Shown here piece by piece: positions 18,960 through 51,983 of a stretch of 64,000 bases of DNA (position 1 is its first letter; each line of letters begins with the position of its first letter). The notes below the pieces were generated by a model that was not told the origin of the DNA, made no database searches, and was given only the letters and a program-made list of their open reading frames with translations. A program made the position numbers and the translations under genes. The stretch is from Takakia lepidozioides. Lineage: Eukaryota > Plantae > Bryophyta. The stretch spans positions 39,928,001 to 39,992,000 of the forward strand of contig CM060733.1 of NCBI GenBank assembly GCA_030704615.1, given 5' to 3'.

Positions 18960-19400
18960 CAAGTGCAGACCAACCACGAGAGTGACCACCAGGCTGAATA
19001 GCAGACTGATCAAAGCAAAAAGTAGACTAAGCACCAGACTGACCAGACTGAGGACAGTGAGCAGCAGACTGACGCTGAACATGGTCCTCTGAGGGAGGGC
19101 CAACATGTCGTTCCCCCCGCCCACGAGAGTGTCCACCAGACTCGACAACAGACTGACCAGAGCGGCGAGCAGACTGAGCACCAGATTGGCCAGACTGAGG
19201 ACACTGAGCAGCAGACTGATGCCGAACATGGACAGACTAAGGGCCAACATGTCGTTCCCCCCGCACACAAGAGTGTCCACCAGACTCGATAGCAGACTGA
19301 CCAGAGCGGCGAGTAGACTGAGCACCAGGCTAACCAGACTGAGGATACTGAGCAGCAGACTGACGATAACATTGGAAGACTGAGGGCCAACATGCCGCGC
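18960..19400 (+). repeat. ~144-bp tandem repeat, three copies, CAGACT-rich
   Basis: gggccaacatg recurs at 19097, 19241 and 19384. Confidence 0.85.
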
Positions 19401-26585: not shown

Positions 26586-28134
26586 TGCAGCTAGGCAGAC
26601 AGAGATTGACACACGGCCTGCCCCAACCTGCGCGCAACAGAAGAAGACAAGGTGAGCGCGCAGCAGAAGAAGACGAGGACGAGGTCTGCGCGGCGGATAG
26701 GGCTTAGTGCTAGGCGGGGGAAAAAAAAAAAACGTCTCAAAAGGAATTTGAGCACGGGATGCTGTGGCGGGTGAACGATGATCTTACCAGTACGCTACAC
26801 ACTAACATCTATAACACTATCTCAAATATATATATATATTTTAGGACTTTTCCAACCCCTTTGTATATACATAGTCTGTATGTGGGGGTATTTAATAAAC
26901 CCCCTTCTGTTCACGCACGTGATAGGTACATTAAACCTCGGTGCACCCCCCGGCCCTGCCTCTCGCTGGTTGAGTCCGTTCAGTCTGGCAAATCTGCCCG
27001 GTCTTTTGAATGAGGACAGTCTGCTCGGTCTGCCCACTCAGCCCTGAGTCTGCTCAATCTGCCGAGTCTGCTGAGTCTGCCCATTATGCTGAGTCTGCTG
27101 AGTGATGAGTCTTCTGAGTCTGTTGAGTCGTGACTCTGCCGAGTCGGCTGAGTGTAGTGGGACCAGGACCCAACCTACTTGCGAGTCTGTAGAGTTTGCT
27201 GGAGAGGCAATTGGAGTGGTCTGCTGAGAGGACTGCTACCGTGAAACTCATGAGATTCATCTTGCAGGGCGCACTGGAGTGTTGTTGTCATCGACGTGCG
27301 GAAAGGCTACTACACTCACATGAACTCCATCGAGTCTTTGCATGGTTGCCCATATGTTTTGTCATGGATACGGAAGCTGCATGCGGAGTGTTTAGGCTAC
27401 AGTGTTGATTTACCGGGTTGGGAGGAGGTTAGGGCGTTTCAGTTCAACCAGCCTGAAGTGCCCCAACAGCCATTCAGCTGGGAATGCGGGTTTTACGTCA
27501 TGTCATTCATCCAAGGATATTATGAATGGCTACAAACTGGGCATAGTTGAGCCACTTCTAAAAGGGCAGAGAGAAGAGTACCTTTTACAAAACATTGGTT
27601 TACGTTCAAGTTTGCACTTGGCCAACGGATGCATTGTCTTAAGTACATCTTGACTGGTTTGACCGCTGCTGAGAAAGTAGTATCCTCATAGATATCCATC
27701 TGGGCCCGAGATTAGAGATGCACCATAGGACGCATTTGTCATGTAAGCATGCTTTTGAGCATTTGCAACGAAATAAAATATGACTTTGCATACACATCCT
27801 ATTGGTCGCATGTGAGTGTAGTGTGGAGTAGTCGCTGTAGACTTGTGACCAATTCACTGCATGTTGTTAAGCGGACTTACCCCTGCACACACAATCATTT
27901 TGTTTAACATACCAAGGGAGTCCACTGGTCAGCAAACAGCCGAGAGTCAGCAGACTGCCAGAGTACGGGAAGAGGGTATGCCTAGGCTTGTGAGAAGACA
28001 GAGGGCAATGTTGCCAGACTGACGAGAGTCCGACAGACTGAGGAGTTGGAACCAGTCCGGCAGACTGGCAGATGCGATTGGGAACCATGAGTCTGCACTG
28101 GTGAGCAGACTGTCGAGAGAGTCACCGGGCACCT

Positions 28135-30635
28135 CTACAGTACATGAGGTCTCCCATATCTTTCAGCAAGTTTGCGACAGTGATAGGATCTTTGGTTTTT
28201 GCACATGATTGCTTCATCCAAGCCCGCCGGACATGCCAAAGGCATATGAAAATGAGCACTCCTCGAAAAACAGCCCTGCAAAGTACACATGCCCACATGA
28301 GAGACTTCAAAGAGGACTTCGCCGGTGGACTTGGGCACTAACCCAATAGACTGTCTAGTTGACTGGTCTGCCCGTCTATTCCAAACGGATTTAGGCAGCA
28401 GACTCGCCCACTCTGACCTACCATGAGTGTTGCCCTCACGACACCGCCAGCAGACCTGACCACGCTGGCCTCGCAGCGGACTTACGTAAGTGAGTCTTGC
28501 AATGGACTTGGCCAGAGGCATCCCAAATGGATTGGGTTGCCAGCAGACTTCCGAACAGTCCCCTCCGGCGGACTCATCTGCGAGCGGACTTGCTCGACCA
28601 GACTGAGGTCGCAGCAGACTGGTGCACGTGAGTCTTGCAGCGGACTGCTTCCGAACAGTCCCCTCCGGTGGACTCGCCTGCGAGCGGACTTGCTCGACCA
28701 GACTGAGGTCACAACAGACTGGCGCACGTGAGTCTTGCAGCGGTCTGCTTACGAACAGTCCCCTCCGGCGGACCTGCTTGCCAACGGACTTGCTGGACCA
28801 GACTGAGGTCGCAGCAGACTGGCCGGCGTGAGTCTTGCAGCGGACTACTTGAGAACAGTCCCCTCCGGTGGACTGCCCTGCTAGCGGACTTGCCCTTAGG
28901 AGACCAGCAGCAGACTTATCCAGACTTTGCTGGCAGCACACCCGAGCAGACTGACTTTACAGCATACTTGCGCAAGTGAGTCTTCCAGTGGACTTCACTA
29001 GAGGACATTATCAGCGGACTGGTTTGCCAGGAGACTTGCAGAAATGAATGGGCCGGACTTGCAGCCAGGACTGCGTTGTATGGCAGGGGACTTGCCGAAG
29101 AGACAGATAATGGACGCAGACGACGGACTTGCACGCGAGTGTACAGGAGGGTTTGAAACTTACGTAATGGCGTTTATTTCGGCGTCGACATCGTCCACAA
29201 TAAAGGCATTGGGTCGCCAGTCCGGCATTTCTGCGAGGAGAGAGTCCCGCAAGGCTGCCATCCACGGCACCAGGTCTGTTGTCCGCTCGCGCGCGCATAT
29301 GATGTACGCAATTGGTATACCGTTAAGCCACTAGTCGAAGACCATCAACGTGTACAATGGGAACTGTTCAAATGCAGAATGTCAGATGCTGCCAATGTGC
29401 GTACATCCACTACTTCTGCAAGTGGATAAATTGTGAAAGGGATGAAGAGTACATTGTGGTGATTTGTCCCGAAGGTTGCATCGCATGCAACGATACGGGC
29501 ATGGCCTAATTGAAGCATTCGCTTTTTATGTCACTCAGTCTGTATGCCGATTGTGAATATTAAGTCGCCATCGTAGTGCTTGAATGTTGGCGCCAATTTC
29601 TCCTCTTGATAGAAGAAGACCGATTTCGGGTTCTGGTCTTTCCACATGCGGACACTCTCCGCATCGTTGGCATGTTTTTTGAACATTTGCCACGCCCGTT
29701 TCTCGGCCAGGTTGCGCACATCCTGCTCCAGCAAAAAATCGTCCCGTGTCCATGCATCCCCCAACCCGGTGTTGTTCATGATGTGCTCTTTATGTTCCAT
29801 CATGATTTGGGCGACTGACAGGCCTCGGCACAGACACTCCATGACCCATGCTTTCAATTCCTCGCTAATGTGTGGTGCATAGGCGTGGCGAGTGTTCCTG
29901 AACTCAACAGACTTCCCATGACAGGCGTTCCCTTTCGCGTCTGTATGCTCCATATTGTTGTAGTACGTGAGGACACAGATGTCGGGGGCAAGATAGCATT
30001 GCTGGACCTTGAAACAGCACTGACAACCATGCTTGTAAGACTCTCCATATTCCGACTTCTTTCTCCTTGGGCCTTTATGAGGGTGAGATGTTCCAACACC
30101 CACAAGAGGTCCTCCACATTTTAGTTTGGGATCCTCCACTATCGCATTGTTGGTGCGTTTGTCATTTGGACCGTAGCAGCATTGATACCTGGACATAAAA
30201 ATCACAATGGATATCCATCGACTCTGGAAGCATGAAATCACAGAACGTGGGTACGAAAAATGGCAACAGACATGCAATCAGACTACAAAAGGACGATGAG
30301 GATGGAGCACACATGATACTGTTCAGAGAATTGCTGGCTCTCGGCTCTTTTAGCATGCCGGGTTGCATTTTAGTATGGACATTCACCCAAAACTGAGTGG
30401 GGTAGTCCACCAAACTCTCCTCTCCAAGGAGAAAGTCATCAACTCTATCCCACGGTATGCAGGCCTTCAGAACATTCTGTCTGGCACCCATATAACCATA
30501 TTGCGTGTCTCTCTTCCATTGGAGGTCCTTCGTGTTGAAGGGTCCCGGTTTGGGTGTTTGTAAACTTTATCGAAGAGGCTGTATAATCCAACATCCCGTT
30601 TTTAGTATATCATCACCTTCTACTTCCACGTCCAT
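28135..30635 (-). pseudogene. MULE transposase similar to Arabidopsis At4g13970/At1g60560-type SWIM/MULE proteins; spliced, C-terminally truncated
   Basis: IPWDRVDDFLLGE, YQCCYGPND, KHGCQCCFKV, EHTDAKGNACHG, YAPHISEELK, DAESVRMW, FTIGIQTE*, IVACDATFGTN, FPLYTLMVFD*WLNGIPIAY, WRPNAFIVDD, CLWHVRRAW. Stops at 30567, 29531 and ~29331. Confidence 0.85.
28490..28890. repeat. 100-bp tandem repeat, four copies, in a transposase intron
   Basis: gaacagtcccctccgg starts at 28553, 28653, 28753 and 28853. Confidence 0.92.
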
Positions 30636-31414
30636 GCCCTGTACAGTACAGAGGACACGCTTTAAAATCTGCAAGAAACGTGTCCAACGTGCAAAGAGCA
30701 TCAGTGCGCACGTTCGCGGCTGTTGGCAAGTGGCGGACGGCTTTGAATTCATGCCCTAAAAATGGAGGGCTCAGATGACATTTGCGAACGAACGGTCCAG
30801 ATGCAGCATCATCAGTGGATTGGAGGAAAACGGACTCATGGGCGGCGGACTGGCAGGCAGACTATTGGGTGGACTGGCCGGGACTGGCACAGCGGACTGG
30901 CATGGATGGCGCGGATGGGTTTCTCAGAATGGACGATCCAGATCCTTTGGCCGGCGCGGATTGGCAGACTGGGGGCAGCAGACGGGCACAGCGGACTATT
31001 GGGTGGACTTGTGGGGACTAACACAACGGACTGGCGTGCACAGCAGACTGGCGGTTTGGCGGACTGAGGGGAACTGGAGTCACGGGCAGCGGACTGGTGG
31101 GCGGACTGGCCGCGCCGGACTGGGGGCGCGGCGGAGCGCGGGTAGGGGTGCCGCAGGCGCGGCTCGTGGGGCCGCGGCAGCAGGGCGACCGCGCGCAGCG
31201 GCGGGGGGTCCCGGTAGGGGGAGCCGGGCGTCCGTGCGCGGGGCCCACTGGTCAGCTCGCACGTGCGCCATAACGTCCCAATTATTGTAAAATGAGAGGC
31301 TTTTTGCAATCTCCCCTACCGAGGTTTCATATATTAAAATATCCACTTTGCTATTTTCGCGAATTTCTAGTAACCAAAAGTACTATAACTCAAGAACAAA
31401 ATTAACCTAGGGGG

Positions 31415-31443
<29 letters not shown>
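31415..31443 (+). repeat. Poly(A) tract, 29 nt
   Basis: Direct reading of the sequence. Confidence 0.9.
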
Positions 31444-31445
<2 letters not shown>

Positions 31446-32459
31446 TCAAATTCCAAATCTCCCACATGAACGGCCAATCACCGCTCCAAGAAAGCCCAGG
31501 TACCATCTGGATATTATTATGTAGTAAGGTAGTAGATCAGTGCGTGACTCGGTATGGGCTGTGCAGCAATTTGATACTCCCGCACTCTCTCCAGACAGCC
31601 AGCATATCATAATGGCATGTATATGGATAGTATCAGGCACAGGGTTTAGGTTGTGTATTAAGGTACATAACTGAGTCTGCTTATGGGTTAAGCTTTGAGT
31701 CGGGATAATCAATCGCTAGTGGGATAGTTGAATTTAAGCTATGGCCATGTGGGTAGTGGTATGTATATAATGTGAGCAGCTGCATTAAAAGGTTTGACCT
31801 GTAGAAGGGTGTGAGTTGCTGCAACCATGGCCGGTTGTACACAAACCACCCTTTAAGGGTGACAGTTTCTTTGGTATGCTGATATGGGGAGGGATGAGTG
31901 TGGCAGGTGGGGTATGTAGGAGTATACATAGTATACAGCATAGAGTTGGAGAGGAATTGGAATGCCCAAGGTGAACTTCTGGGGAGAGCACATCAGGTGA
32001 TTTGTAATCTTCAGACGTGGTGAATGACATGTGTTTTGTACAAAAGCTTATACTATGACTTGAATTTGTATAATCTGAATAGCATTTTGGTGCCTTCATG
32101 TCCTCCTTGAGTAGCCAGTGGAGCTGAGTGACATGTGGTATGATGCTCAGATCATGTCGCAGGGAGTGTATGCGAGCCTCTTTGTATGATGGGCATGAAT
32201 TTGGGTGGTCAGGGGGCACTGTACATGGAATCTGCACATGTGAATGGATTGGTGGGGTCTGTGGACTGGTATAATATAGGAGGTTCCTTGTATGAAAGGG
32301 AGCAGAGTATGCACAACGCACTCGTTGAGATCATCTTTTTGTACAACAATACTTTTGATAGGCAGTGTGCTAAGATGATGATAGCGGGGTGAGTACGGGG
32401 AGTGCGGTAAGTACCCATTGAATGGCCTGCAATGTCGGGAAGAGAGGGGGGTATAGATC

Positions 32460-35524: not shown

Positions 35525-35805
35525 GTTCCAGCAGACATATACTGCACATGTTGACGCCGATTAGAGCCTGCAGATGAGAAGGTGCATAGCCCGCAGCGTC
35601 TTTATCCTTCACTATAACGTCCAGCAGACATATACTGCACATGTTGTCGCCGATTAGAGCCTGCAGATGAGAAGGTGCAAAGCCCGCAGCGTCTTTCTCC
35701 TTCATTATAACGTCCAGCAGACATATACTGCACATGTTGTCGCCGATTAGAGCCTGCAGATGAGGAGGTGCATAGCCCGCAGCGTCTTTCTCCTTCATTA
35801 TAACT
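35525..35805. repeat. 93-bp tandem repeat, three copies
   Basis: ccagcagacatatactgcacatgttg at ~35528, 35621 and 35714; reads as a 31-aa repeat on the minus strand. Confidence 0.9.
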
Positions 35806-36610: not shown

Positions 36611-36829
36611 ATGTATGTCATGTTGTTTTAAAGCAACAAAATTTATTACTCCATATTTTCTCAATTCATGCATTAAGAATACAAAGGGAGTGTGTGCTCC
36701 CTCTTGTTCTGTGCCTGGTCTCTATCCACAAGGCTCCGGCAAACAGCAAACATCGTATGAGTACATTCTCTCATGAACAGCAGATTGATGCTTGTGTTAT
36801 GATGTGTCCGTTCCCTATTGTACATCAAT

Positions 36830-38640
36830 TCACCAGTATTCCTCACAAGAACAAACCCCATTTTCAAAGCGGTGAAAGCGGTTGGCATCCCGTACAAGAA
36901 TTGCTCGCCCAACAATCTTTGAGATAAACTTAGTGGCTGTGTGGCAGTCACCACACACCCGAAGGTTCTTGATGACACGAAGAGGCGTGCCTGGGGCTGT
37001 GCTGATCAACCCAAAGGCAATGGCCAGCTTCTCACAGTGAAGGCAGAGAAAACTCATTTTTTGCTCCTCCTCCACATTATGCAACACAAAGCGTGTGTCA
37101 GGCACATACCCTGCCTCCTCCATCTGTCGAGACAGCCTTCTCAGCTCAACATAGATTTCCTCAATTTGTGGATCTCTATGTAGCAGGAACCAGGCTGCTT
37201 TCGGACACCTCTGATTTTCATCATTTTTCTTTTTGCAGTATCATCCCACCTGCCAGCTGCGGCATAGATATTTGATAGCATCACATAAGTAGTAGCATCC
37301 TGTCGACCCCACTTGAGAATAGATTTAGCCGCACATTCTGCCACCTCCACATTCCCATGAATTCTGCAGGCACCAAGCAAGGCTTTCCACACCACCACAT
37401 TTGGGGGGACTGGCATTTCGTTAATGAAGTCCTCAACCTCATCCAATTGCCCCGCACGGCCAAGATGTAGCCAAAGTGCTCCACTATACGAGTGAGGCCA
37501 TGATCTCGACTCAGGGAATCGAAGTAGTGTCTGCCTTCATCCACTAGGCCCCCATGGCTACATGCTTGGAGAACACTTATAAAGGTGATATTATTTGGCT
37601 TGAAACCTTCTTTTTACATACCTTCAAAACAGTTGCAGGGCTTCCCTACGACAACCATGTTGGGCATATCCTGCAATCATTGCACTCCATGAAACCACAT
37701 TTCGTTCAGCCATTTTGTCAAACACTCCCTTTGCATCCTTGATGCTCCCACATTTAGCATACATGTCCATGAGGGCAGTGTCCAGAATGACACCTGGTAC
37801 AATTCCAGCTTTCATGATGTCAGCGTGGACTTCTTTACCCTTTTCGAGAGCTGCCAAGCAGGCACAAGCATTGCAAGCAAAAACAAACGTAACCTGGTCA
37901 GGCTTCGCCCACTCCTGCATCATTTGTTCATAGGTCCCCAAAGTCTCCATCCAGCACCCATGCTGGGCATATCATTTTATCATCGCATTCCAGGACACCA
38001 AATTTCGTTCAGCCATTTTTGTCAAAGACTCCCTTTGCATCTTCGATGCTCCCGCATTTTTCATACATGTCCACAAGGGTACTGTTCAGAATGGAATCTG
38101 GTACAATTCCAGTTCTCAAGATGTCAGTGTGGACCTCTTTGCCTTTTTCTAGGGCTACCAAGCTCGCACACACATTGCAAAGGCAGACAAACGTGACCTG
38201 GTTGGGCTTCACCCCTTGCCACATCATTCGGTCATAGGTCCCCAAAGCCTCCATCCCACACCCATGTTGGGCGTATCCTGCAATCATTGCACTCCATGAC
38301 ACCATATTTTGTTCAGCCATGTTGTCGAACACTCCCTTTGCATCCTCAATGCTCCCGCATTTGGCATACATGTCCACAAGGGCAGTGTCCAGAATGACAC
38401 ATGGTACAATTCTAGCTTTCTTGATGTCAGCATGGACCTGTTTGCCTTTTTCCAGGGCTGCCAGGTTTGCACATGCATTATATATGCAACCGAACGTGAC
38501 CTGGTTGGGCTTCACCCCTTCCCGCATCATCTGCTCATAGGTCTCCAAAGCCTCCATCCCAAACCCATGTTGGACATATCCTGCAATCATCGCACTCCAT
38601 GACACCACATTTTGTTTAGCCATTTTGTCAAAGACTAACA
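36830..38640 (-). pseudogene. PLS-E-DYW PPR gene copy 1 (frameshifted)
   Basis: ORFs 38009-38677, 37624-37950, 37281-37544, 37141-37446 and 36830-37123 give P-L-S repeats, L2/S2, E1/E2 and a DYW domain (HCEKLA...CGDCH...CSCEEYW) in shifting frames. Confidence 0.92.
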
Positions 38641-39457: not shown

Positions 39458-40519
39458 GGCGTGCTAAGACCAAGCCGACTCTCCCAAGAACCTTGTAAAC
39501 AAAAGGAAAAATATCAAATGATGGTACTAAGGTCCCTTCCAGACCACCGACCGGACAAAACACTCAAAAACAACGTTTGTCCACTGTTTCGGCCGTTTCA
39601 CAGATGCCATGTCATCAAAAATTGCGGGAAGTTACGGAACCCAGCGGACGAGCTTCATAGCGTTTTCACACCAAGTAGTGGACAAAAAGGGTCCACTGGA
39701 CAACTTGATATCGCGCTCAGATAGCTCACGATGCTTTGGCAAAGGTACAAGGTGCAGAGAAAGAAGAGACCCGCCGATAGCCTTCGTTAGGTTTTGTCCA
39801 GTGGACAAGATTCTAGGCCTACTATTACCTGGCCCCAAATTTGCTTTGGTGGCTCAATTGGAGCGATGACTCAGCACATTGGAAAGACTCCTCTTCACTG
39901 GAAAGCATGTAGCGCACAAAATCCGGTTTTTAACCAATCAAAGTGCAAGTTCGTTTTGTCAGGTCGCTAGTCTGGAACCGCCCTAACAGGAGCCAAACGG
40001 CCCTAGCAGCCAAGAGCCCACAAATGCAGGAGCCAAGCATTAGATGGGGCCCTAGAGTTGAATGTGAGGGAGCCGGTTCAGCCAGCGTGGACCCCCCGCC
40101 ACCCCCTGCCCACCCCCACCTCCATCGCCCGCACACCGCGCGGCAGCTGCCGCGCGGCACGCCCTCCCGTGCCTCATATGCCCGCTGGGGGACATGACGC
40201 ATGCCCTGGCCATGCCCTCTCCCGCCTCCCATCCTGCCCTCATGCCTGCCATCGTCTTGCATCCAACATAGTACATGCTATCCCAAGCATACATCATGCA
40301 TTCATGAAATTATGCATAATTCAAAAATTATTCTGACAGGTATTCAAATTTCAAATGGCAAATCTGAGCAAAGGACTTGACGTTCAGATGTATGCCACGT
40401 CGTCACATACATGGCCACCCCAATTGAGGGTTTTTCTACCCTCATCGTGCATTTCCTCGTACAACAGTTCTCTCCATGCTTTCCAACCGCGTCCCTACGC
40501 AACGAGGGCATTCACATTC

Positions 40520-42484
40520 CATGGAACGCGATGGAATGGTGTCATGGAACGCGATGATCGCAAAATATGCACAGCACGGTCTGGGATGGAGGCTTTGGAG
40601 ACCTATGAGCAAATGATGCGCGGGGGGGGTGAGGCCCAACCATATCACGTTTGTTTGCATTTGCAATGCGTGTGCGAGCCTTGCAGCCTTGGAAAAGGGC
40701 AAAGAGGTCCACGGTGATATCGTCAAAGCTGGAATAGTACCAGACGTCATTCTGAACACTGCCCTGGTGGACATGTATGCCAAATGATGCAAAGGGAGTG
40801 TTCGATAACATGGTTGAACGAAATATGGTGTCATGGAACGCAATGATCGTAGAATATGCACAACACGGGTGTGGAATGGAGGCTTTGGAGACCTATGAGC
40901 AAATGATGCGCGGGGGGTGAGTCCCAACCATATCACGTTTGTTTGCATTTGCAATGCGTGTGCAAGCCTTGTAGCCTTGGAAAAGGGCAAAGAGGTCCAT
41001 GGTGATATTGTCAAAGCTGGAATAGTACCAGACGTCATTCTGAACACTGCCCTGGTGGACATGTATGCCAAATGTGGGAGCATTGAAGATGCATTGAGCA
41101 GATGATGTGGGAAAGGGTGAAGCCCGACCACATCACGTTTGTTTGTGTTTGCAAGGTATGTGCAAACTTGGCAGCTCTCGAAAAGGGTAAAGAGGTCCAT
41201 GGTGACATCGTCAAAGCTGGAAGTGTACCAGATGTTATTCTGCACAGTACCCTTGTGGACATGTATGCCAAATGTGGGAGCATTGAAGATTCAAATGGAG
41301 TGTTTGACACTACAGCTGAACGTGATGTGGTGTCGTGGAATGCAATGATTGCAGGATATGCACAGCAGGGCGCGGGACTGAGGCTTTGCATACATAAGAG
41401 CAAATGATGCAGGAAGAGGTGAAGCCCAACCACATCACGTTTTTTTGTGTTTGCAATGCATATGCAAGGGTGGCAGCCTTGGAAAAGGGCAAAGAGGTCC
41501 ATGGTGACATCGTCAGAGCTGGTATTGTACCAAATGTCACTCTAAACAATGCCCTCGTGGACATGTATGCCAAATGTGGGAGCATGGAGAATGCAAAGGG
41601 AGTGTTCAACAATATGGCCGATCGAGATGTAGCGTCCTAGAATGCTATGATTGCAGGATCTGAAGGAATGCAAACGGAAAGCTTGAAGCTCGACAGTTTC
41701 ACCTTTATATGTCTTTTCTTTGCATGCAGCCACATTGGCCTACTGGATGAAGGAAGATGCAACTTTGATTCCCTGAGTCAACATCATGATGTCTCTCCGA
41801 CAGTAAAGCACTCTGGCTGCATGGAGGACCTTCTTGGACATATGGGGCAATTGGATGAGGCAGAGGAGCTTTTAACAAAATGCCAATGAAACCAATTGCT
41901 ATGGTCTGGAGGGCCTTGCTTGGTGCCTGCAGAATCCATGGCAATGTGGAGATGGTTGAACGTGCAACAACATCTATTCTCAAGTGGGATGAATAGGATG
42001 CTGCGACTTATGTGTTGCTATCAAACATCTATGTTGCAGGTGGCAGGTGGGACGATAGTGCAAAGGTACGAAAAATGATGAAGGTCAGAGGGGCTAGAAA
42101 GGAGCTAGGTCACTGCTGCCTTTGTTGTAGATGACAAATTGCACCCCAAAATTAAGGAAATCCATGCTGAGCTGAGAAGATTGTCTGGACAGATGAAGAA
42201 GGCCGGGTATGTGCCTGACACGCTTTGTATTACATGATGTGGGGGAGGAGCAAAATGAATTTTCTCTTTGCCACCACAGTGAGAAGCTGGCCATTGGTTT
42301 TGGGCTGATCAGCACGGCCCCTAGGAGTACACTCCGGCTCATCAAGAATCTTCGGGTGTGTGGTGACTGCGACACCTCCACCAAGTTCATTTCAAAGATT
42401 GATGGCCGCGCAATTGTTGTACGGCATGCTAACCGCTTTCACCACTTTGAAGATGGGGTTTGTTCTTGCCGGGATTACTGGTGA
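40520..42484 (+). pseudogene. PLS-E-DYW PPR copy 2 (5'-truncated MULE cargo)
   Basis: Broken P-L-S repeats with stops and deletions, E domains, [10 protein letters not shown]...CGDC...CSCRDYW. The last 146 bp are tandemly duplicated (second CSCGDYW* ends at 42630). Confidence 0.92.
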
Positions 42485-43955
42485 AACAGTTTTTTCTGGA
42501 AAATTGTGGTGACTGCCACACCTCCACCAAGTTCATCTCAAAGATTGTTGGCAGCGCAATTGTTGTACAGGATGCTAACCGCTTTCACCACTTTGAAGAT
42601 GGGGTTTGTTCTTGCGGGGATTACTGGTGAAACAATTTTTTTTGGGAAGATGCAAGTGTCTTGCTTCATTCATTGATCTGTGTAGCTACTCAGTTCATCC
42701 ACCATTTCTGGAGAAGATTGACCATGATGTACTGTTGAGGGCATTTTCCTGCTGCATATCCACAGGAAATGGTAGTGGGGTAGGTGAAGTCAGCCCATAC
42801 TTGCACTTGACTGGAGCAGGTAATGAGTAAAGGGGGGATTTCGACTGACTCTGGTGATAGTGGAAGGACATTAGAGTGTTGTGCTAGTTCTGGTGTGGGT
42901 GGTGGACCTTCTCCAAAGCTTGGAATTGGATCTTGGTGAATTAAGGCTAGCTTTCGATGCAAGCTAATCAAGAGCTCTATCTGACGCAGCGCCGTGATAC
43001 AAACATGTCCAAATTTAAGATGTTGAACAAACTTGTGCATAAGGCTGTCCTTCTAATCAAGCTCATTACGAATTGTATTCACTTTCATCTGGCCTGAAAC
43101 TTCACGTAGTGTTTGTAAAGTACTTGAGATGCTGATCTCAAACAAGCGCCAAGATCTCCTAAATATCCAATACCACGTCACGAAAAGCAAACCTCTTTTT
43201 CTCAATCTCTTGCTTCCAGTAACTGTCCAATATCTCAAATTTGGACCCAAAAACTTATGGGTGAATCTCTTGATCCATCATGATGGTTCAATTAATATTA
43301 ATACAATTACACCAAAATAATGGATATGACTAATGAGAGGGTGATGTCGACCGCTCCTCCTTTGGCTGTGACGGCATTGTCACAACAAGACTCCACTTTG
43401 TCTTGTGATGTGGTGTGACACTCAACTCTTGTGCTAAGGGTGGGATGTGTTACACCCAAGATCACCCTGGCTATGCACAGGCAAGGCACAACTACCCAAC
43501 CACGCATGACTACAGATCATATAACAAATATCTTTCCCAGGTAGAGTGAAGATCATTCCCACAAAGGAGACTCTGTCTGGCTTCCTGTTGGTAAGGAAAA
43601 TGTTTGCAGTATCTTTCTTTTTCTTGTATGAGATACAATTATGCGATCCAATGAGAGCCACGTGTCATATTTGTGGTCAAATTGGGAGCTCTAGTAGCAA
43701 TGTAGGCATACACATTCTGTTTGCTAGCATGATCTGATGCCTGTAATCAGATTGTTTTTTATCATGTGGGTGCAAAGCGCAATCTTGGGCACCTCCTGGT
43801 TGGTAGACTCCACAATCAGCTCTTGTTGCGTTGTTATGCCGAGGGGAGGAAATGCCTTTAAAAGTATGTCATAGTCGACATTCCCAGGGCAATGGCGAAT
43901 GAACCAAGCAGCTGGATGCTTTTAATGAATGAAGCAAGCCACTCACAACATCAAT

Positions 43956-45888
43956 TCACTAGAATAAACCCATCCTCAAAGTGGTGAAAGCGGCTGGTAT
44001 CCTGTTCAACAATTGCTCGCCGAACAATCTTTGAGATGAACTTGGTGGCTGTGGCAGTCACCACACATTCAAAGGTTCTTGATGAATCAAAGAGGTGTCC
44101 CTGGTGCCGTACTCATCCGCCCAAAAGTAATGGCCACCTTGCTGTGGTGGCAAAGAGAAATTTCTTTTGCTCCTACATATCATGCAATACAAACGTGCGT
44201 CAGGCACATACCCGGCCTCCTTCATGTGCCCAGACAATCTTCTCAGCTCAACATGCATTTCCTAATTTGTGGATACAATTGTTATCTACCACCAAATATG
44301 TGGACCCGTTTACCAAAGTCAATGGAGCAGCGACCTAGCTGCTTTTTGATACCTCTGAATTGCATCATTTTCCTCACCTTTGTAGTATCGTCCCACCTAC
44401 CAGTTGCAGCATATATAAGTGATAGCAATTCATAAGTTATGGTGTCCTTGTTGATCCCGCTTGAGAATAGATTTTGCCACAGATTGTGCCACCTCCACAT
44501 TCCCATAAATTCTGTATGCACCAAGCAAGGTCTTCCACACCGCAGCATCTGGTTGGACAGGCATTTTGTTGATGAGTCCTCAGCCTCATCCAATTGCCCT
44601 GCACGACCAAGGAGGTCCACCATGCAGCCAAAATGTTCCATTGTAGGAGTCAGGCCATGATCTCGATGCAGGGAATCAAAGTAGTGTCTACCTTCATCCA
44701 CTAGACCCCATGACTACATGCTTGGAGAACACATATAAAAGTGATACTGCAGTTCGGCGTCAAGCCTGTCTTCCTTATGACAACCATGCTGGGCATATCC
44801 TGCAATCATGGCATTCCATGATACCACATTTCGTCCAGCCATACTGTTGAACACTTCCTTTGCATCGTCAATGCTCCCACATATGGCATAAATGTCCACA
44901 AGGGAATTGTTAAGAATGACATCTGGTACAATTCCAGATTTCATGATGTCAGCATGGACCTCTCTGCCTTTTTCCAGGGCTATCAGGCACGCACATGCAT
45001 TGCAAACGCAAATGAAGGTGGCCTGATCTGGCTTCACCTCTTCGCCCATCATTTGCTCATAGGTCTCCAAACCCTCCATTCCGCATCCATGCTAGGCATA
45101 TCCTCCTATCATTGTGTTCCATGACACCACATTTCGTTCAGCCATTTTGGCGAACACTCCCTTTGCATCCTCAATGCTCCCACATTTGGCGTACATGTCC
45201 ACGAGGGTGTTGTTCAGAATGACATCTGGTACAATTTCAGCTGTCACAATGTCAGCATGGACCTCTCTGCCTTTTTTTAGGGCTGCCCTCCCTGCACACG
45301 CATTGCAAACGCAAAGGAAAGTGACCCGGTTTGGCTTCACCCCTACCCGGATCATTTGCTCATAGGTCTCCAAAGCATCCATTCCGCATCCATGTTGGGC
45401 ATATCCTGTGATCATAGCATTCCATGACACCACATTTCGTTCTGCCATATTGTCAAACAGCCCATTTGCATCCTTGAGGCTCCCACATTTGGCATAAATG
45501 TCTACAAGGGTGTTGTTCAGAATGACATCTGGTACAATTCCAGCTTTTATGATGTCAGCATGAACCTCTCTGCCATTTTCCAGGGCTGCTAGGCCTGCAT
45601 AGGCATTGCAAATGCAAATGAACGTGACCTGGTCTGGCTTCACCGTACCCCTTCCTGGATCATTTTCTCGTAGGTCCTCAAAGCCTCCATCCCACACCCA
45701 TGCTGGGAATATCCTCCAATCATAGCACTCCAGGAAACCACATATTGTTCAGCCATACTGTTGAACACTCCCTTTGCATCCTTAATGCTCCCGCATTTGG
45801 CATACATGTCCACCAAGGTGTTGTTCAGAATGACATCTGGGTCAATTCCAGCTTTCATGATGTCAGAATGGACCTCTTTGACCTTTCC
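43956..45888 (-). pseudogene. PLS-E-DYW PPR copy 3 (5'-truncated MULE cargo)
   Basis: ORFs 45640-45858, 45092-45697, 44714-45079 and 44282-44701, then a frameshifted DYW domain lacking the terminal CSCxDYW codons. Confidence 0.92.
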
Positions 45889-46353
45889 TCATCTGATGAC
45901 AACTCCTGAAATACTTGACTCTGCGACCTCCGTCCTTACTGATTTCCGATGAAGATCACCCAAATTTTCTTGGGACACCGAGGCATGGGAGGCCTGGCCC
46001 TTTGTCCTATTTGTGGTTTTGCGAGGTAGCATATGTCCATGGCGCCTGAGGACATCCTCCATAATAGCCTTCTGGCTTGGTGTGAGGGGCCCTTCACCTT
46101 CCCCATGCTTCATACAACCATCCACCCTATGCAAGTTCAATTTTTTTTTATCGGCAAAAAGCAGATCACATTGTATGCATCTGTATTGTCGTCTGTTAGA
46201 CGCACCAGGTTCATCGACCCGTGCCATCATGTAGGCCTCGCATATGAGGGACTCGTATTCATCACTTTCATAAGTCTCGCGATATTCCCTCCAGTTCTCT
46301 ATCATTTTGCTCTCCTTCATCGTGAGTGTTGCGTCTGCCAACAATTGCAGCAT
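45889..46353 (-). pseudogene. Remnant of MULE accessory gene with C2H2-like zinc finger
   Basis: YRCIQCDLLFADKKKLNLHRVDGCMKHG; aligns with the 15305-15550 peptide of MULE-1. Confidence 0.7.
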
Positions 46354-47527
46354 CGTGCAAACCTACACAGACAATGCCAAGCATAAATCCACATGCCACT
46401 CACTTACTTGAACCCTCAAATTGCCCGCATGGCCATTGAACCCCCCAATACCTCCATGGTGTGCATGTCATTTACACTAAACCCTAAACCCCAAAACAAA
46501 ATGGAAGGACTGCAGATAATGACATATCTCAGAATGGAGAGTGTTCATGGCCGCATATGTGCACGTCCCTGGAGCTCGCAAGTGAACTATGGAAACAACA
46601 GTCAATCCAGGTCTGCTCCTTCACATACCAAGCAAATATAACATGCAACCTGCTCAGATGATTGGTTTCGGATGCTCGATGCAGAACTCACTCACGTGCT
46701 AAATCCTGGAAGAAGAGCACAATCACAATCCGGAGAACACAGAAGAGAAATATCAAGGGATAATAAGGACCTGCACGCAATTGGAGATGAAGCGGTGCAA
46801 CCATTGAAGACAGCCAAAACATCCTGCTTCGTAGCCCGATTGTCCATTCGTGTCCACAAACTGAACCTCCATGGCGGGACGCGGTACGCCAACGCCCTCA
46901 AAAATTGATAGCCACATTTCGCGATGGCTGCCAACAACACACCGTCCCGTCTCATTCTACATGCAATGCAATGATATGGATGCAATGGAAGCATGCATGT
47001 ACCATGGGCAGGATGAAGGCATGCAGGGGGGATGGGGATGCGGGAGAGGGCATGGCCAGGGCATGCGTCATGTCCCTGCAGCGGGCACATGAGGTGCGGG
47101 AGGGTGTGCCGCGCAGCAGCTTCCGCGTGGTGCGCGGGCGATGGAGGTGGGGGTGGGCAGGGGGTGGCGGGGGGTCCACGCTGGCTGAACCGGCTCCCTC
47201 GCATTCAACTCCAGAGCCCCATCTAATGCTTGGCAATGCAGGATGGACAAACTTCTTCACATCGCACATTAAGCCACATAGTGCCACGTGGCACTATCGA
47301 CCGAGACAGGAGCAGGCGCCGAGTGGAGTTGGGTGAGAAGGGACCTCATTTCTACAGGGTGAGCTACAATGGAGAGCAACCATTGTTTTACTGCAAGCAG
47401 ATCTGAGCCAGGCAAGGGCTGGACAGCAGCCGCAAATCTTCACACTCGGAGGTTGCAGCGCAGGTTGCAAAATTCTTAGAGGGAGCAGCCATGGCAGCGC
47501 GCTTTAAAATTCACAGAAGGAGAAGCC

Positions 47528-50500
47528 ATGGCAGCGCGTACAATACGAATGGCATACTACACATGTTCCCGTGGCACCCCGGGGTGCCCTCACCGAGACT
47601 ACTCTGCTTGCAAGACTGGCCTTGTTCCGACAGCTTCACGAAAGTGTGGGCTGTACACACTGTACGGGACCCCTGCGCATTTGAACCGCATTGCAATAAG
47701 ATTTTCCACAACTGGTTTCAAGCCGATTGCGGGGCAGTTGCGACCAATAGAGGAGGACCAAGTCCGTGGACAAGGGGGTGAGCAGGGAGACCACAGGCAA
47801 GGCTATCCGGACAGCCAAAATACAGACATGGAAAAGCTTTGGAAGGAATATTTCGCAGACCCCAGCCGTTGGTGGGACAATCGAGGTAAACGGATCCTTT
47901 GCAGAGGACCGGACTTGAAGGACAAGAGTCTCAAGGCGGGACTCTGGATTAATAGCTACAAGAAACCTCTAGGCCTACCGGTAGATGGAATGAAAACTGT
48001 GGGAGCACAATGTGAGGCCGGCACTCCCACCAGCACTTCCACCATCGCTTTTGAAAGATATGGGGATGTGAGGGCACTCTGTAAGACAGGACAACTGAAA
48101 GAGGCATTGCGTCTTTTGCACGATGGAGGTATTGTGGCAAACTCGAAAACTTATCTCTGTCTCTTGCAGGAGTGCATCAAGATGAAATGGCTAACAGAGG
48201 GAAAGCGGGTGCATGCCCATATTATCCAGAGCGGATTCGAGCCTGACGTATTCCTATGCAACACCCTCGTCAACATGCATGCCAAATGCGGGAGAATAGT
48301 GGATGCACGCCTAGTGTTTGACAAAATGCCTGAACGAGGTTTAAGTACCTGGAATATAATGATGGCAGGATATGCCAATCGGGGACATTTCAGGGAGGCC
48401 TTCGAGACCTATGAGCAATTGATGCGGGAAGGGTTGAGACCCAACCAGGCCACATTCATTTGCGTTCTCAAGGCGTGTGCCAATCTGGCAGACCTGGAAA
48501 AGGGCAAAGGTGTTCATGCTGACATCTTGAAAGCTGGAATTGTGTCGAATATCATCTTGGACACTACCCTCGTGGACATGTATGCCAAATGCGGGAGCAT
48601 CAACGATGCAAAGGGGGTGTTTGAGACTATGGCTGAACGAGATGTGGTGTCATGGGGTGCGATGATCGCAGGCTATGCCCAGCAAGGGTGTGGGCTGGAG
48701 GCTTGGGAGACCTATGACCAAATGATGCGGGAGGGGGTGAAACCCAACCAGGTCACCTTTATTTGCGTCTGCAATGCATGTGCGAGCATGGCAGCCTTGG
48801 GAAAGGGCAAAGAGGTCCATGCTGACATACTGAAAGCTGGAATAGTGCCAAACATCATCTTGGACACCACCCTGGTGGACATGTATGCCAAATGCGGGAG
48901 CATCAAGGATGCAAAGGGAGTGTTTGACAGTATGGCTGAACGAGATGTGGTCTCATGGAATGCGATGGTTGCAGGACACGCCCGGCATGGGTGTGGGACA
49001 GAAGCTTTGGAGACCTATGAGCGAATGGTGCGGACAGGGGTGAAGCCAAACCAGGGCACGTTTGTGTCTGTTTGCAATGCCTGTGCCAGCTTGGCAGCTT
49101 TGGAAAAGGGCAGAGAGGTCCAGACTGACATCATGAAAGCTGGAATTGTACCAAATATCATCTTGGGGACTACTCTTGTCTACATGTATGCCAAATGTGG
49201 AAGCATCAATGATGCAAAGGGAGTGTTTGACAGTATGGCTGATCGAGATGTGGTGTCTTGGAATGCAATGATCGCAGGATATGACCAGTGTGGATGTGGT
49301 ATGGAGGCTCTGGAGAGCTATCACAAAATGATGCAGGAGGGGGTGAAACCCAACCAGGTCACCTTTGTTAGTGTTTGCAATGCTTGTGCCGGCCTGGCAG
49401 ACCTGGAGAAGGGCAAAGCTGTCCATGCTGACATTGTGAAAGCTGGAATTGTTGTGAATATCATTTTGGGCACTACCCTGGTGGATATGTATGCCAAATG
49501 TGGGAGTACCAACGAGGCAAAGAAAGTGTTTAATAATATGGTTGAACGAAATGTGGTGTCATGGAATGCTATGATCGCAGGATATGCCCAGCATGGGTGT
49601 GGGATGGAGGCTTTGGAGACATATGAACAAATGATGCGCGAAGGAGTGAAGCCCAACCAGGTCACGTTTGTTTGCATTTGCAATGCTTGTGCCAGCCTTA
49701 CAGCCTTGGACAAGGGCAAACAGGTCCATGCTGATATCATGGAAGCTGGAATTGTACCAGATATCATTCTAGACAATACCCTCGTGGACATGTATGCCAA
49801 ATGTGGGAGCATCGAGGATGCAAAGGGAGTGTTCGACAGTATGGCTGAACGAAATGTGGTGTCGTGGAGTGCGATGATTGCAGGATATGCCCAGCATGGT
49901 TGTCGTAGGGAGGCCCTGCAATTATTTGAGGGAATGCAAAAGGAAGGCTTGAAGCCGAACAGCGTCACCTTTTTATCTGTTCTGTCTGCATGTAGTCATG
50001 GGGGCCTAGTGGATGAGGGCAGACACTTCTTTGATTCTCTGACTCAAAAGCATGGCCTAACTCCTACGGTGGAGCACTTTGGCTGCATAGTGGATCTTCT
50101 TGGCCGTGCAGGCCGGTTGGATGAGGCAGAGAATTTCATTAATAATATGCCAGTCAAACCGGATGCCGTAGTGTGGAAAGCCTTGCTTGGTGCCTGCAGA
50201 ACTCAAGGGAATGTGGAGGTGGCAGAACGAGCGGCGAAGTCGATTCTGACATGGGATCAACAGGATGCTGCAACTTATGTGTTGCTATCAAACATCTATG
50301 CTGCAGCTGGCAGGTGGGACGATACTGCAAAGGTTAGAAGAATGATGAAGGTCAGAGGTGTCAGAAAGGAGCCAGGTCGCTCTTGCATTGAGGTCGGCAA
50401 TAGGGTGCACACATTTGTGGTAGATGACAAATTGCATCCACATATTGCAGAAGTCCATGCTGAGTTGAGAAGTTTGTCTGAGCAAATGAAGGAGGCAGGG

Positions 50501-50779
50501 TATGTGCCTGACACACGCTTTGCATTGAATTATGTGGAGGAGGAGCAAAAGGAAATTTCTCTCTGCCAGCACAGTGAAAAGCTGGCCATTGCTTTTGGGT
50601 TAATCAACACGACCCCTGGGACGCCTGTCCGTGTCATCAAGAACCTTCGGGTGTGTGGCGACTGCCACATGGCCACCAAGTTCATATCAAAGATTGTTGG
50701 GCGAGTAATTGTTGTACGTGATGCGAACCGCTTTCACCACTTCCAAGATGGGGTTTGTTCTTGTGGGGAGTACTGGTGA
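47528..50779 (+). CDS. Intact intronless PLS-E-DYW PPR protein (putative organellar C-to-U editing factor) with an N-terminal PDF motif, 1083 aa
   Basis: R/S/T-rich, acid-poor N-terminus (transit-peptide-like). PDF-like motif at 47828-47968. Six L-S-P triplets, L2-S2, E1-E2, PG box, HSEKLA, CGDCH, terminal EYW. Confidence 0.96.
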   Translation: MAARTIRMAYYTCSRGTPGCPHRDYSACKTGLVPTASRKCGLYTLYGTPAHLNRIAIRFSTTGFKPIAGQLRPIEEDQVRGQGGEQGDHRQGYPDSQNTDMEKLWKEYFADPSRWWDNRGKRILCRGPDLKDKSLKAGLWINSYKKPLGLPVDGMKTVGAQCEAGTPTSTSTIAFERYGDVRALCKTGQLKEALRLLHDGGIVANSKTYLCLLQECIKMKWLTEGKRVHAHIIQSGFEPDVFLCNTLVNMHAKCGRIVDARLVFDKMPERGLSTWNIMMAGYANRGHFREAFETYEQLMREGLRPNQATFICVLKACANLADLEKGKGVHADILKAGIVSNIILDTTLVDMYAKCGSINDAKGVFETMAERDVVSWGAMIAGYAQQGCGLEAWETYDQMMREGVKPNQVTFICVCNACASMAALGKGKEVHADILKAGIVPNIILDTTLVDMYAKCGSIKDAKGVFDSMAERDVVSWNAMVAGHARHGCGTEALETYERMVRTGVKPNQGTFVSVCNACASLAALEKGREVQTDIMKAGIVPNIILGTTLVYMYAKCGSINDAKGVFDSMADRDVVSWNAMIAGYDQCGCGMEALESYHKMMQEGVKPNQVTFVSVCNACAGLADLEKGKAVHADIVKAGIVVNIILGTTLVDMYAKCGSTNEAKKVFNNMVERNVVSWNAMIAGYAQHGCGMEALETYEQMMREGVKPNQVTFVCICNACASLTALDKGKQVHADIMEAGIVPDIILDNTLVDMYAKCGSIEDAKGVFDSMAERNVVSWSAMIAGYAQHGCRREALQLFEGMQKEGLKPNSVTFLSVLSACSHGGLVDEGRHFFDSLTQKHGLTPTVEHFGCIVDLLGRAGRLDEAENFINNMPVKPDAVVWKALLGACRTQGNVEVAERAAKSILTWDQQDAATYVLLSNIYAAAGRWDDTAKVRRMMKVRGVRKEPGRSCIEVGNRVHTFVVDDKLHPHIAEVHAELRSLSEQMKEAGYVPDTRFALNYVEEEQKEISLCQHSEKLAIAFGLINTTPGTPVRVIKNLRVCGDCHMATKFISKIVGRVIVVRDANRFHHFQDGVCSCGEYW

Positions 50780-51983
50780 AACGATGCTGTTGTTGTAAGG
50801 TGTCAGTGCGTTGCTTCATTCCCTATAAGTCTGCAGCTGCTTGATTCACCATTCCCTGGGAAGGCTGGTTATGATGTACTGTTGGGCATTTCCTCCATGG
50901 CATATTACCCCTCCAAGAGCCCATTTGGAGGTGGAAACTCAGCTCAAAATTGCAATATGTTCCCACACAACCCCCATGTCAATCTGGTTACGGACATTAA
51001 TGGTTGATGGACAGGGTGGTCTAGAGCGTGCTAGGAAATAAAATGTGGATGTCTGAACTAAGCTGGCCTTAGATGTGATATGTGGCTGTCCTTGGACTGC
51101 AGAGTCACGTCTCAAAGAAAGATAAAGAAACATATCTGATATTCTGTGTCAAATACATGGCAGAGGGCTTGATGGCATTAGGTGGAATTCACTTGTTTTA
51201 ACCTCGTTGTACCATCATCCATTTTCGTTGAAAGAGTCTCTTTACTTTGTTGCGCTTGAGGTGCCCAAAACTGAAATGGACCAAATGAACCTGGCCAACG
51301 TCGCATCATAACAAGGATGTAGTGACACCAAAGAGTATACAGGAGTTAGGGTCTTGGGTTCTAACATGACATGCTTGTGGCAAGGGAGAGGCTACATAGG
51401 AGTGACAGCCAGCATACCACGTTGGATGTGATTTGGGTTCAAACCACGGTCTGGTGTGTCATGAAGGTGTCCACCTTTCAGCTGGAAGGCAGTAGCCCTT
51501 GTGGTGAAGTGACACCATAAATTACGCCCCCTTGGGGAGGCGACATACTTTTTTCTTTTCTTTTTTACTTTCTAGGAGTGACAAAACTTGTTGATGTGAG
51601 ATGAACCTCTCTAGAAAGACCTGTCCATGAGTCACTGGACTTACTGGTTCCATGTAGGCTGTTCGGCCTTGAGCCAGATAATGGCCTCACAGGCAACATT
51701 GTAGCCAGGCCTTCGGACATTCTCTTTTATTTCACAGATAGGACTGTTGATTGTTTTCCTTGTATTTTCAGTACACATCTTCCCATCTCGAAAACGAAGA
51801 GAGACGGAAGACTCACAGATCTTCGGAATGGTCTATAAACTCTTTGTGTGAGTCAGTTTCATGTACATTCGTACATTCCCACTAGTAAATAGTTCGAATT
51901 CATGAGAAAACAAGTACATCCAGATGGGTGTTACAGAAGTCTAATGCTCACGTTTTTGTGCAGTGTAATTCAGTCTTTAGACC

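What the first reader, a model, noticed from the sequence alone, without database searches (positions are those of the whole stretch)
40032..47234. Pack-MULE carrying two RNA-editing-factor gene fragments, inserted inside the same family's cluster
Seen: 9-bp TSD and ~210-bp TIRs with no recognisable transposase. The interior holds two 5'-truncated PLS-E-DYW copies with 3' flanks homologous to 50780-50940 and no poly(A). Their repeats (HGCGMEALETYEQMMREGVKPN type) match the flanking genes. Known: Pack-MULEs capture gene fragments, whereas intronless PPR expansion is usually attributed to retroposition. Inference: DNA-transposon capture, or gap repair from neighbours, is a route for PPR-DYW amplification and shuffling here.
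Basis: partly seen in the sequence, partly recalled or inferred. Interest (0 to 1): 0.8.

Follow-up and report, generated by a model that had tools for sequence, protein, structure and literature searches.

The report
Pack-MULE carrying broken PPR-DYW genes
A 7.2-kb cut-and-paste transposon of the Mutator type, with no transposase of its own, landed just upstream of a working RNA-editing (PPR-DYW) gene in a moss-like plant genome; it carries two broken copies of related editing genes and the front piece of a third gene, which makes it a known kind of gene-carrying element with unusual but dead cargo.

Summary
Window 40032-47234 is bounded by 216-218-bp GC-rich terminal inverted repeats (92% identical) and a perfect 9-bp target-site duplication, AATGCAGGA. 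I found no transposase. The interior holds two convergent 5'-truncated PLS-E-DYW copies. Both are pseudogenes, and each keeps 120-150 bp of 3' flank homologous to the flank of the neighbouring intact gene. Neither has a poly(A) tail or a duplication of its own.

One thing is new here. The 154-codon ORF upstream of copy B, in the same frame, is the N-terminal piece of a moss gene of unknown function (41% identical to a Ceratodon protein). That makes a third cargo fragment.

"Pack-MULE" is supported. "Gap repair from neighbours" is not. The cargo differs from both flanking PPR copies by K2P 0.22-0.26, while the two repeat arms differ by only 0.09, so the cargo is older than this insertion. The position, 293 bp upstream of a gene's start codon, fits the known Mutator preference for gene 5' ends.

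The scan has already noted this on other DNA of the same genome (s1-488524, s1-481726 and about six more).

Verdict: a new member of a known kind. This copy is dead, so nothing here shows that the route produces working editing factors.

The parts
40023..40031 (.). left copy of the 9-bp target-site duplication AATGCAGGA
   Evidence: identical 9-mer directly outside both repeat ends
40032..40247 (+). left terminal inverted repeat (216 bp, 70% G+C)
   Evidence: 92% identical to the reverse complement of 47017-47234; no other copy in the window
40248..40400 (.). subterminal sequence, unique in the window, with no protein match
40401..42484 (+). PPR copy A: 5'-truncated PLS-E-DYW pseudogene. DNA homology begins at 40524 and the reading frame changes 3>2>1>3>2. 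It has an internal 288-bp tandem duplication (40536-40786 / 40825-41074, K2P 0.046). The last 91 codons (42209-42484) are still an open DYW-domain ORF.
42505..42648 (+). tandem duplicate of 42359-42502: the last ~42 codons of the DYW domain, the stop and ~18 nt of flank (93% identical, K2P 0.073). A second stop lies at 42628-42630.
42631..42746 (+). 3' flank of copy A, homologous to the 3' flank of the intact gene (50777-50891, 69%) and to that of copy B (72%); no poly(A)
42747..43807 (.). central spacer, unique in the window, with no protein-family or Atlas match
43808..43960 (-). 3' flank of copy B, homologous to 50801-50930 (72%); no poly(A)
43961..45888 (-). PPR copy B: 5'-truncated PLS-E-DYW pseudogene. 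It has about four 303-bp PLS triplets, at least two frameshifts, several in-frame stops and a 14-bp deletion in the last DYW codons.
45892..46353 (-). 154-codon ORF, the third cargo fragment. It is the N-terminal coding piece of a moss gene of unknown function (conserved CxxC...H...C motif). It is in the same frame as copy B, separated only by the stop TGA at 45889-45891.
   Evidence: E 3e-18, 41% identity between ORF residues 12-112 and residues 2-110 of Ceratodon purpureus KAG0615240.1 (846 aa); those relatives have no significant Pfam family.
46354..47016 (.). subterminal sequence, unique in the window; possibly the upstream region of the third gene fragment (inference)
47017..47234 (-). 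right terminal inverted repeat (218 bp)
47235..47243 (.). right copy of the target-site duplication AATGCAGGA
47528..50779 (+). context, not part of the element: intact 1083-aa PLS-E-DYW gene whose start codon lies 293 bp from the right end of the element
36829..38638 (-). context, not part of the element: upstream 5'-truncated PPR-E-DYW pseudogene (frames -1/-2/-1). It loses homology to the other 3' flanks about 10 nt after the stop.

Best explanation
This is a non-autonomous Mutator-like element of the Pack-MULE kind. A transposase encoded elsewhere recognised the ~217-bp inverted repeats and moved the 7,203-bp unit as one piece. It inserted 293 bp upstream of the start codon of an intact PPR-DYW gene and created the 9-bp duplication. 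The element already carried its cargo when it arrived. That cargo is two 3' portions of PLS-E-DYW genes, copied as DNA with 120-150 bp of 3' flank and placed tail to tail, plus the N-terminal coding piece of an unrelated moss gene joined in frame to copy B. All of it came from paralogues other than the two neighbours. Since then the cargo has decayed (frameshifts, stops, small tandem duplications) and makes no editing factor. Shown: the ends, the duplication, the absence of a recognisable transposase, the three gene fragments, their broken state, and the age order (cargo split older than insertion). Inferred: mobilisation in trans, DNA-level capture by template switching or gap filling at an earlier site, and membership of a multi-copy family. 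The last rests only on earlier scan notes that I did not check.
For: The 9/9 duplication abuts the repeats, and the repeats are 92% identical over 216-218 bp. No transposase or other Pfam family was found in any non-PPR ORF of 50 aa or more. Two PPR-E-DYW copies match the 1083-aa gene at protein and DNA level, with 3' flank and no poly(A). The third fragment is homologous to the N-terminus of moss proteins. Cargo-to-neighbour K2P is 0.22-0.26 against 0.090 between the repeat arms. The four-taxon tree is nearly a star, and copies A and B are not closest to each other. MULEs and Pack-MULEs insert mostly within 500 bp upstream of genes (PMC5861414). Multi-copy Pack-TIRs arise by transposition after capture (PMC8277862). 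Earlier scan notes report other ~7-kb MULEs with two convergent PPR-DYW pseudogenes plus a piece of a third gene in this genome (unchecked).
Against: Superfamily assignment therefore rests on duplication length and repeat length alone. PPR genes have no introns, so the usual proof of DNA-level capture (retained introns) is unavailable. The dating argument assumes the two repeat arms have not been homogenised by conversion. A common origin of A and B by internal inverted duplication is not rejected (AU p 0.087).
Confidence: 0.8

Rival explanations
1. Filling in place, independent of transposition. A MULE sat here first, its interior was lost on excision or breakage, and the gap between the retained repeats was repaired using the neighbouring PPR genes as templates. 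This is the 'gap filling' route described for single-copy Pack-TIRs.
For: The cargo belongs to the same PPR subfamily as both neighbours, with the same 303-bp PLS triplets and a shared 3' flank with the intact gene. Templates lying close by are typical of gap filling (PMC8277862).
Against: Cargo-to-neighbour divergence (K2P 0.22-0.26) is about 2.5 times the divergence between the repeat arms (0.090). Any event after the insertion should be younger than the arms' divergence. One partner, the intact gene, is under constraint, which makes the gap larger still. The third fragment and the 1.06-kb spacer have no template anywhere in the window. Earlier notes report the same layout at unlinked sites (unchecked).
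Confidence: 0.07
2. The PPR pieces are retrocopies, or other later insertions, that landed inside an already fixed MULE. On this reading the transposon never carried them.
For: PPR genes lack introns and their spread is usually ascribed to retroposition (PMC13386178). Both pieces end in a stretch of 3' untranslated flank.
Against: There is no poly(A) tract or A-rich remnant at either 3' end. There is no flanking direct repeat beyond chance: one 9-mer lying inside homologous sequence, against about 0.2 expected. Both copies are 5'-truncated in mid-motif, and copy B is joined directly to another gene's coding piece. Two independent retro-insertions of the same subfamily into one 7-kb element is unlikely.
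Confidence: 0.05
3. The inverted PPR pair acts as a hairpin locus. Read-through transcription of the two convergent copies gives double-stranded RNA and small RNAs that dampen PPR-DYW paralogues, as Mu killer does for MuDR.
For: The arms are inverted over about 1.4 kb. The cargo shares 40 (A) and 63 (B) exact 21-mers with the adjacent intact gene.
Against: The arms are only 75% identical to each other, the longest exact match is 26 nt, and only 21 exact 21-mers are shared, so the duplex would be poor. There are no expression or small-RNA data.
Confidence: 0.05
4. It is not a transposon. The inverted repeats and the 9-mer are by-products of a local inverted segmental duplication within the PPR cluster.
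For: The interior is itself roughly palindromic.
Against: The repeat arms are far better conserved (92%) than the interior inverted repeats (75-80%). They are separated from those repeats by unequal unique segments (150-280 bp on the left, 1.1 kb on the right). They also end exactly at a perfect 9-bp direct repeat.
Confidence: 0.02

Closest known systems
Pack-MULEs of rice, maize and Arabidopsis (Jiang et al. 2004, cited in PMC2869330; PMC5861414)
   Same: Both have long GC-rich terminal inverted repeats, a 9-bp duplication and no transposase. Both carry fragments of several unrelated host genes joined into a chimeric reading frame. Both insert within 500 bp upstream of a gene.
   Different: The host is a bryophyte-grade plant. 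The cargo is PPR-E-DYW editing-factor sequence, present twice in convergent orientation. At 7.2 kb the element is larger than most rice Pack-MULEs (from my own knowledge). Neither the Pack-TYPE survey (PMC8903248) nor the 2026 gene-capture review (PMC13317346) mentions PPR cargo or bryophytes.
Other PPR-DYW-carrying TIR elements noted by this scan in the same genome (s1-488524, s1-481726, s1-473414, s1-479691 and others)
   Same: They are reported as ~7-kb Mutator-type elements without a transposase, holding two convergent PPR-DYW pseudogenes and a piece of a third gene. This is probably the same family.
   Different: This copy sits next to an intact paralogue, which those notes do not mention.
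Pack-TIRs made by gap filling or fork switching (Tan et al. 2021, PMC8277862)
   Same: A TIR element whose interior is host sequence. That paper gives the two candidate capture mechanisms.
   Different: The single-copy gap-filling type has a young, nearby parent. Here the nearby paralogues are too diverged to be the parents.
PPR retrogenes / dispersed duplicates (PMC13386178)
   Same: Intronless PPR-DYW sequence copied to a new site.
   Different: There is no poly(A). The copies are bounded by the repeats and duplication of a DNA transposon, and they are linked to a non-PPR gene fragment.

Membership tests
Mutator-like element (MULE) | Target-site duplication of 8-11 bp, typically 9 bp | tested here: met
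   Perfect 9-bp AATGCAGGA on both sides
Mutator-like element (MULE) | Long terminal inverted repeats (about 100-300 bp or more) | tested here: met
   216-218 bp, 92% identical, E 9e-87
Mutator-like element (MULE) | Repeats shared with an autonomous element that encodes a MURA-type (MULE/SWIM) transposase | not testable with these tools
   No second copy of the repeats in the window.
Pack-MULE | No transposase coding capacity | tested here: met
   No Pfam family in any non-PPR ORF of 50 aa or more. Very degenerate remnants cannot be excluded.
Pack-MULE | Interior holds fragments of non-transposon host genes | tested here: met
   Two PPR-E-DYW fragments and an N-terminal fragment of a moss gene
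Pack-MULE | Parental gene(s) identified elsewhere in the genome | tested here: inconclusive
   Paralogues at 76-84% DNA identity flank the element, but they are too diverged to be the parents. The rest of the genome could not be searched.
Pack-MULE | Moved as a unit with its cargo (multi-copy family or polymorphic insertion) | tested here: inconclusive
   The duplication spans the whole unit, and the cargo is older than the insertion. Copy number is known only from unchecked scan notes.
Processed retrocopy | Poly(A) tail and its own flanking target-site duplication | tested here: not met
Functional PLS-E-DYW RNA-editing factor | Uninterrupted ORF with N-terminal targeting region, PLS array, E1/E2 and a DYW deaminase domain | tested here: not met
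   Copies A and B both lack residues 1 to about 200 and carry frameshifts and stops. Only the neighbouring gene 47528-50779 meets this feature.

The most novel reading that the evidence does not exclude
DNA transposons, not only retroposition, may have been a major way of scattering PPR-DYW sequence in this genome (probably Takakia). This MULE family would be one vehicle, with other TIR families and Helitron2 elements noted by the scan. Some intact editing factors may then descend from element-borne copies or chimeras. That would explain why the published survey found that Takakia PPR duplicates are mostly dispersed yet show 'limited retroposition features' (PMC13386178).
Probability: 0.15. 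Interest if true: 0.65.

Novelty: new member of a known kind. Interest (0 to 1): 0.35.

Why it matters
PPR-DYW genes form one of the largest gene families in early land plants, about 2,000 in Takakia. Their spread is currently credited to retroposition (PMC13386178). A clean Pack-MULE with PPR-DYW cargo shows that a DNA-level route also moves this sequence, and that it can fuse it to pieces of other genes. In the papers I could search, none joins DYW-type PPR genes with MULE or Helitron capture. The Pack-TYPE survey and the gene-capture review do not cover bryophytes. This single copy is dead, however, and the scan has already reported the same thing several times. Its value is as one more data point, with a dated, well-bounded insertion next to an intact paralogue, for a genome-wide count that could settle how much DNA transposons contributed.

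Tried and rejected
- **Other copies of the element.** The word search with the 154-aa ORF found nothing.
- **Organism identification.** The intact PPR gave only relatives at 68% identity or less, from Ginkgo, Cryptomeria, Diphasiastrum and Ceratodon. "Takakia" therefore remains the scan's own unchecked label. The Ceratodon hits to the third fragment support a moss.
- **A and B as sister copies from an internal inverted duplication.** This is not favoured: A-B is the largest pairwise distance at 0.287, and the best tree is ((A,gene),(B,up)). It is not rejected either (AU 0.087).
- **Repeats around the two flanking PPR copies.** None found.
- **Central spacer and subterminal regions.** No Pfam, Atlas or Rfam match and no repeat in the window.
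- **Splice donor at the junction of gene fragment and PPR.** None seen.
- **9-mer GAGGGCATT at 40504 and 42737.** I considered it as a private duplication of copy A and rejected it. The second copy lies inside the conserved 3' flank, and the chance expectation is about 0.2.
Full report
**Observation**

The element spans 40032-47234. Its ends are inverted repeats, 40032-40247 and 47234-47017. They align with 201 identities in 219 columns (92%, E 9e-87), are 70% G+C, and differ by K2P 0.090 (15 transitions, 3 transversions). Directly outside both ends lies the same 9-mer, AATGCAGGA, at 40023-40031 and 47235-47243. At fixed junctions that has a chance of about 4e-6. The repeat occurs nowhere else in the 64-kb window. 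The only other long inverted repeats in the region are PPR-to-PPR matches. A 9-bp duplication with ~200-bp inverted repeats is the signature of the Mutator superfamily in plants (established knowledge).

**Interior**

tblastn with the neighbouring intact 1083-aa protein (47528-50779; PPR, E, E+ and DYW domains by Pfam) finds two copies.

- **Copy A, + strand.** It runs from about 40401 (40524 at DNA level) to the stop at 42482-42484.
  - Its reading frame changes 3>2>1>3>2.
  - It has a 288-bp internal tandem duplication (40536-40786 / 40825-41074, K2P 0.046).
  - It has a 146-bp tandem duplication of its last ~42 codons plus the stop (42359-42502 / 42505-42648, K2P 0.073).
  - Its last 91 codons remain an open DYW-domain ORF.
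- **Copy B, - strand, 45888-43961.** It has about four 303-bp PLS triplets, at least two frameshifts, several in-frame stops and a 14-bp deletion in the final DYW codons.
- **Both copies.** Neither contains the first ~200 residues of the reference gene. Both carry 3' flank homologous to that of the intact gene: A at 42628-42746 against 50777-50891 (69%), and B at 43947-43808 against 50801-50930 (72%). There is no poly(A) or A-rich remnant at either end of homology, and no private flanking duplication beyond chance.

The remaining segments are unique in the window: 40248-40400, the spacer 42747-43807, and 45889-47016. None of their ORFs of 50 aa or more matches a Pfam family, so no transposase is recognisable. 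Rfam finds nothing.

**A third cargo fragment**

The 154-codon ORF 45892-46353 (-) found nothing in the word search and only weak zinc-finger leads in the Atlas. The exhaustive HMMER search gave 11 relatives. The two best aligned by their own N-termini:

- a 658-aa Logan protein (E 9e-19);
- Ceratodon purpureus KAG0615240.1, an 846-aa hypothetical protein (E 3e-18; 41% identity, ORF residues 12-112 against protein residues 2-110).

A CxxC...H...C motif is conserved across the family, and these relatives have no significant Pfam family. The fragment therefore holds the start and first ~130 codons of a moss gene of unknown function. It lies in the same frame as PPR copy B, with a single TGA (45889-45891) between them, and the PPR part begins in mid-motif. 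A chimeric frame built from pieces of unrelated genes is typical of Pack-MULEs. The shared frame alone has a one-in-three chance.

**Where the cargo came from**

Pairwise K2P over the non-repetitive E-DYW tails:

| Pair | K2P |
|---|---|
| intact gene - upstream pseudogene | 0.185 |
| A - gene | 0.231 |
| A - upstream | 0.246 |
| B - gene | 0.255 |
| B - upstream | 0.224 |
| A - B | 0.287 |

The four-taxon likelihood comparison prefers ((A,gene),(B,up)). The internal branch is only 0.015, and the other two topologies are not rejected (AU 0.087), so the four copies form a near-star.

The two repeat arms can have diverged since insertion by at most their present K2P of 0.090. Any copying from the neighbours after the element arrived should therefore look younger than 0.09. 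The observed 0.22-0.26 is about 2.5 times older, even though one partner is a constrained gene. The cargo was thus on board before this insertion, and in-situ gap filling from the neighbours is unlikely. That route is the one found for single-copy Pack-TIRs (PMC8277862). One caveat applies: conversion between the arms would make the bound too low.

Earlier scan notes describe other ~7-kb Mutator-type elements with two convergent PPR-DYW pseudogenes and a piece of a third gene at unlinked places in this genome, plus several other TIR and Helitron2 elements with PPR-DYW cargo. This agrees with capture before amplification. I could not inspect those sequences, so I count them as leads only.

**Why it sits next to a PPR gene**

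The right end lies 293 bp upstream of the intact gene's start codon. [quoted passage not shown] If the host is Takakia, it has 2,016 PPR genes (PMC13386178). Landing beside one of them is therefore unremarkable. The upstream copy (36829-38638, -) is itself a 5'-truncated pseudogene. It shares only ~10 nt of 3' flank with copy B and none with the rest. No inverted repeats surround either flanking copy.

**Mechanism**

Shown:
- a single transposition of the whole 7,203-bp unit;
- three host-gene fragments inside it;
- no recognisable transposase;
- a cargo split older than the insertion;
- loss of coding capacity.

Inferred:
- mobilisation in trans by a MURA-type transposase;
- DNA-level capture at an earlier locus, by template switching or gap filling;
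- a multi-copy family.

A hairpin or small-RNA role for the inverted pair is conceivable, since the cargo shares 40 and 63 exact 21-mers with the neighbouring gene. The arms are only 75% identical to each other, though, and there are no expression data.

**Comparison and novelty**

This is a Pack-MULE by four defining features tested here: duplication length, long repeats, no transposase, and host-gene fragments. Two features remain open: shared repeats with an autonomous element, and identified parents. In the searchable literature no paper joins DYW-type PPR genes with MULE or Helitron capture. The Pack-TYPE survey and the 2026 gene-capture review mention neither PPR nor bryophytes. The kingdom-wide PPR study ascribes the expansions to retroposition, while noting 'limited retroposition features' in Takakia. 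The phenomenon may therefore be unreported. Even so, this copy is one more dead instance of something the scan has already noted repeatedly in this genome.

**Limits**

- The genome's own proteins are not in the protein collections.
- The metagenome scan was blank.
- Copy number, the autonomous partner, parent genes and the organism's identity could therefore not be tested. Moss affinity is supported only by the Ceratodon hits.

Noticed in passing
window 24315-24416, 24880-24975, 25444-25539 (-), within tandem arrays 23877-24720 and 24979-25885: Residues 98-130 of the N-terminal extension of the intact PPR gene (47528-50779) have three 59-63% identical copies about 23 kb upstream, inside tandem arrays of period 419 and 184.
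   Followed up: partly
window 47528-50779, protein residues 205-240: Pfam PF13963 (Transposase-associated domain) scores 43 bits, above its cut-off of 27.7, on what looks like an ordinary PPR motif. Two Ginkgo PPR proteins also carry PF13963 in the precomputed list. This is probably cross-matching of the model to PPR helices rather than a transposase relic.
   Followed up: no
window 47469-47501 and 47506-47538: A 33-bp direct repeat (88% identical) spans the start codon of the intact PPR gene. The first copy holds an out-of-frame ATG 37 nt upstream.
   Followed up: no
window 36820-36840: The upstream PPR pseudogene loses all homology to the other three 3' flanks about 10 nt after its stop codon. 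Its duplication or truncation boundary therefore differs from theirs.
   Followed up: no
window 12000-20000 and 28000-32000: These blocks have 50-54% G+C and many 150-270-aa ORFs on both strands, none with a Pfam match. They also hold tandem repeats of 144 bp (18975-19394) and 100 bp (28548-28893).
   Followed up: no
window 35527-35804: Three copies of a 93-bp unit at 96% identity, 1 kb from the 3' end of the upstream PPR pseudogene.
   Followed up: no
   Followed up: no
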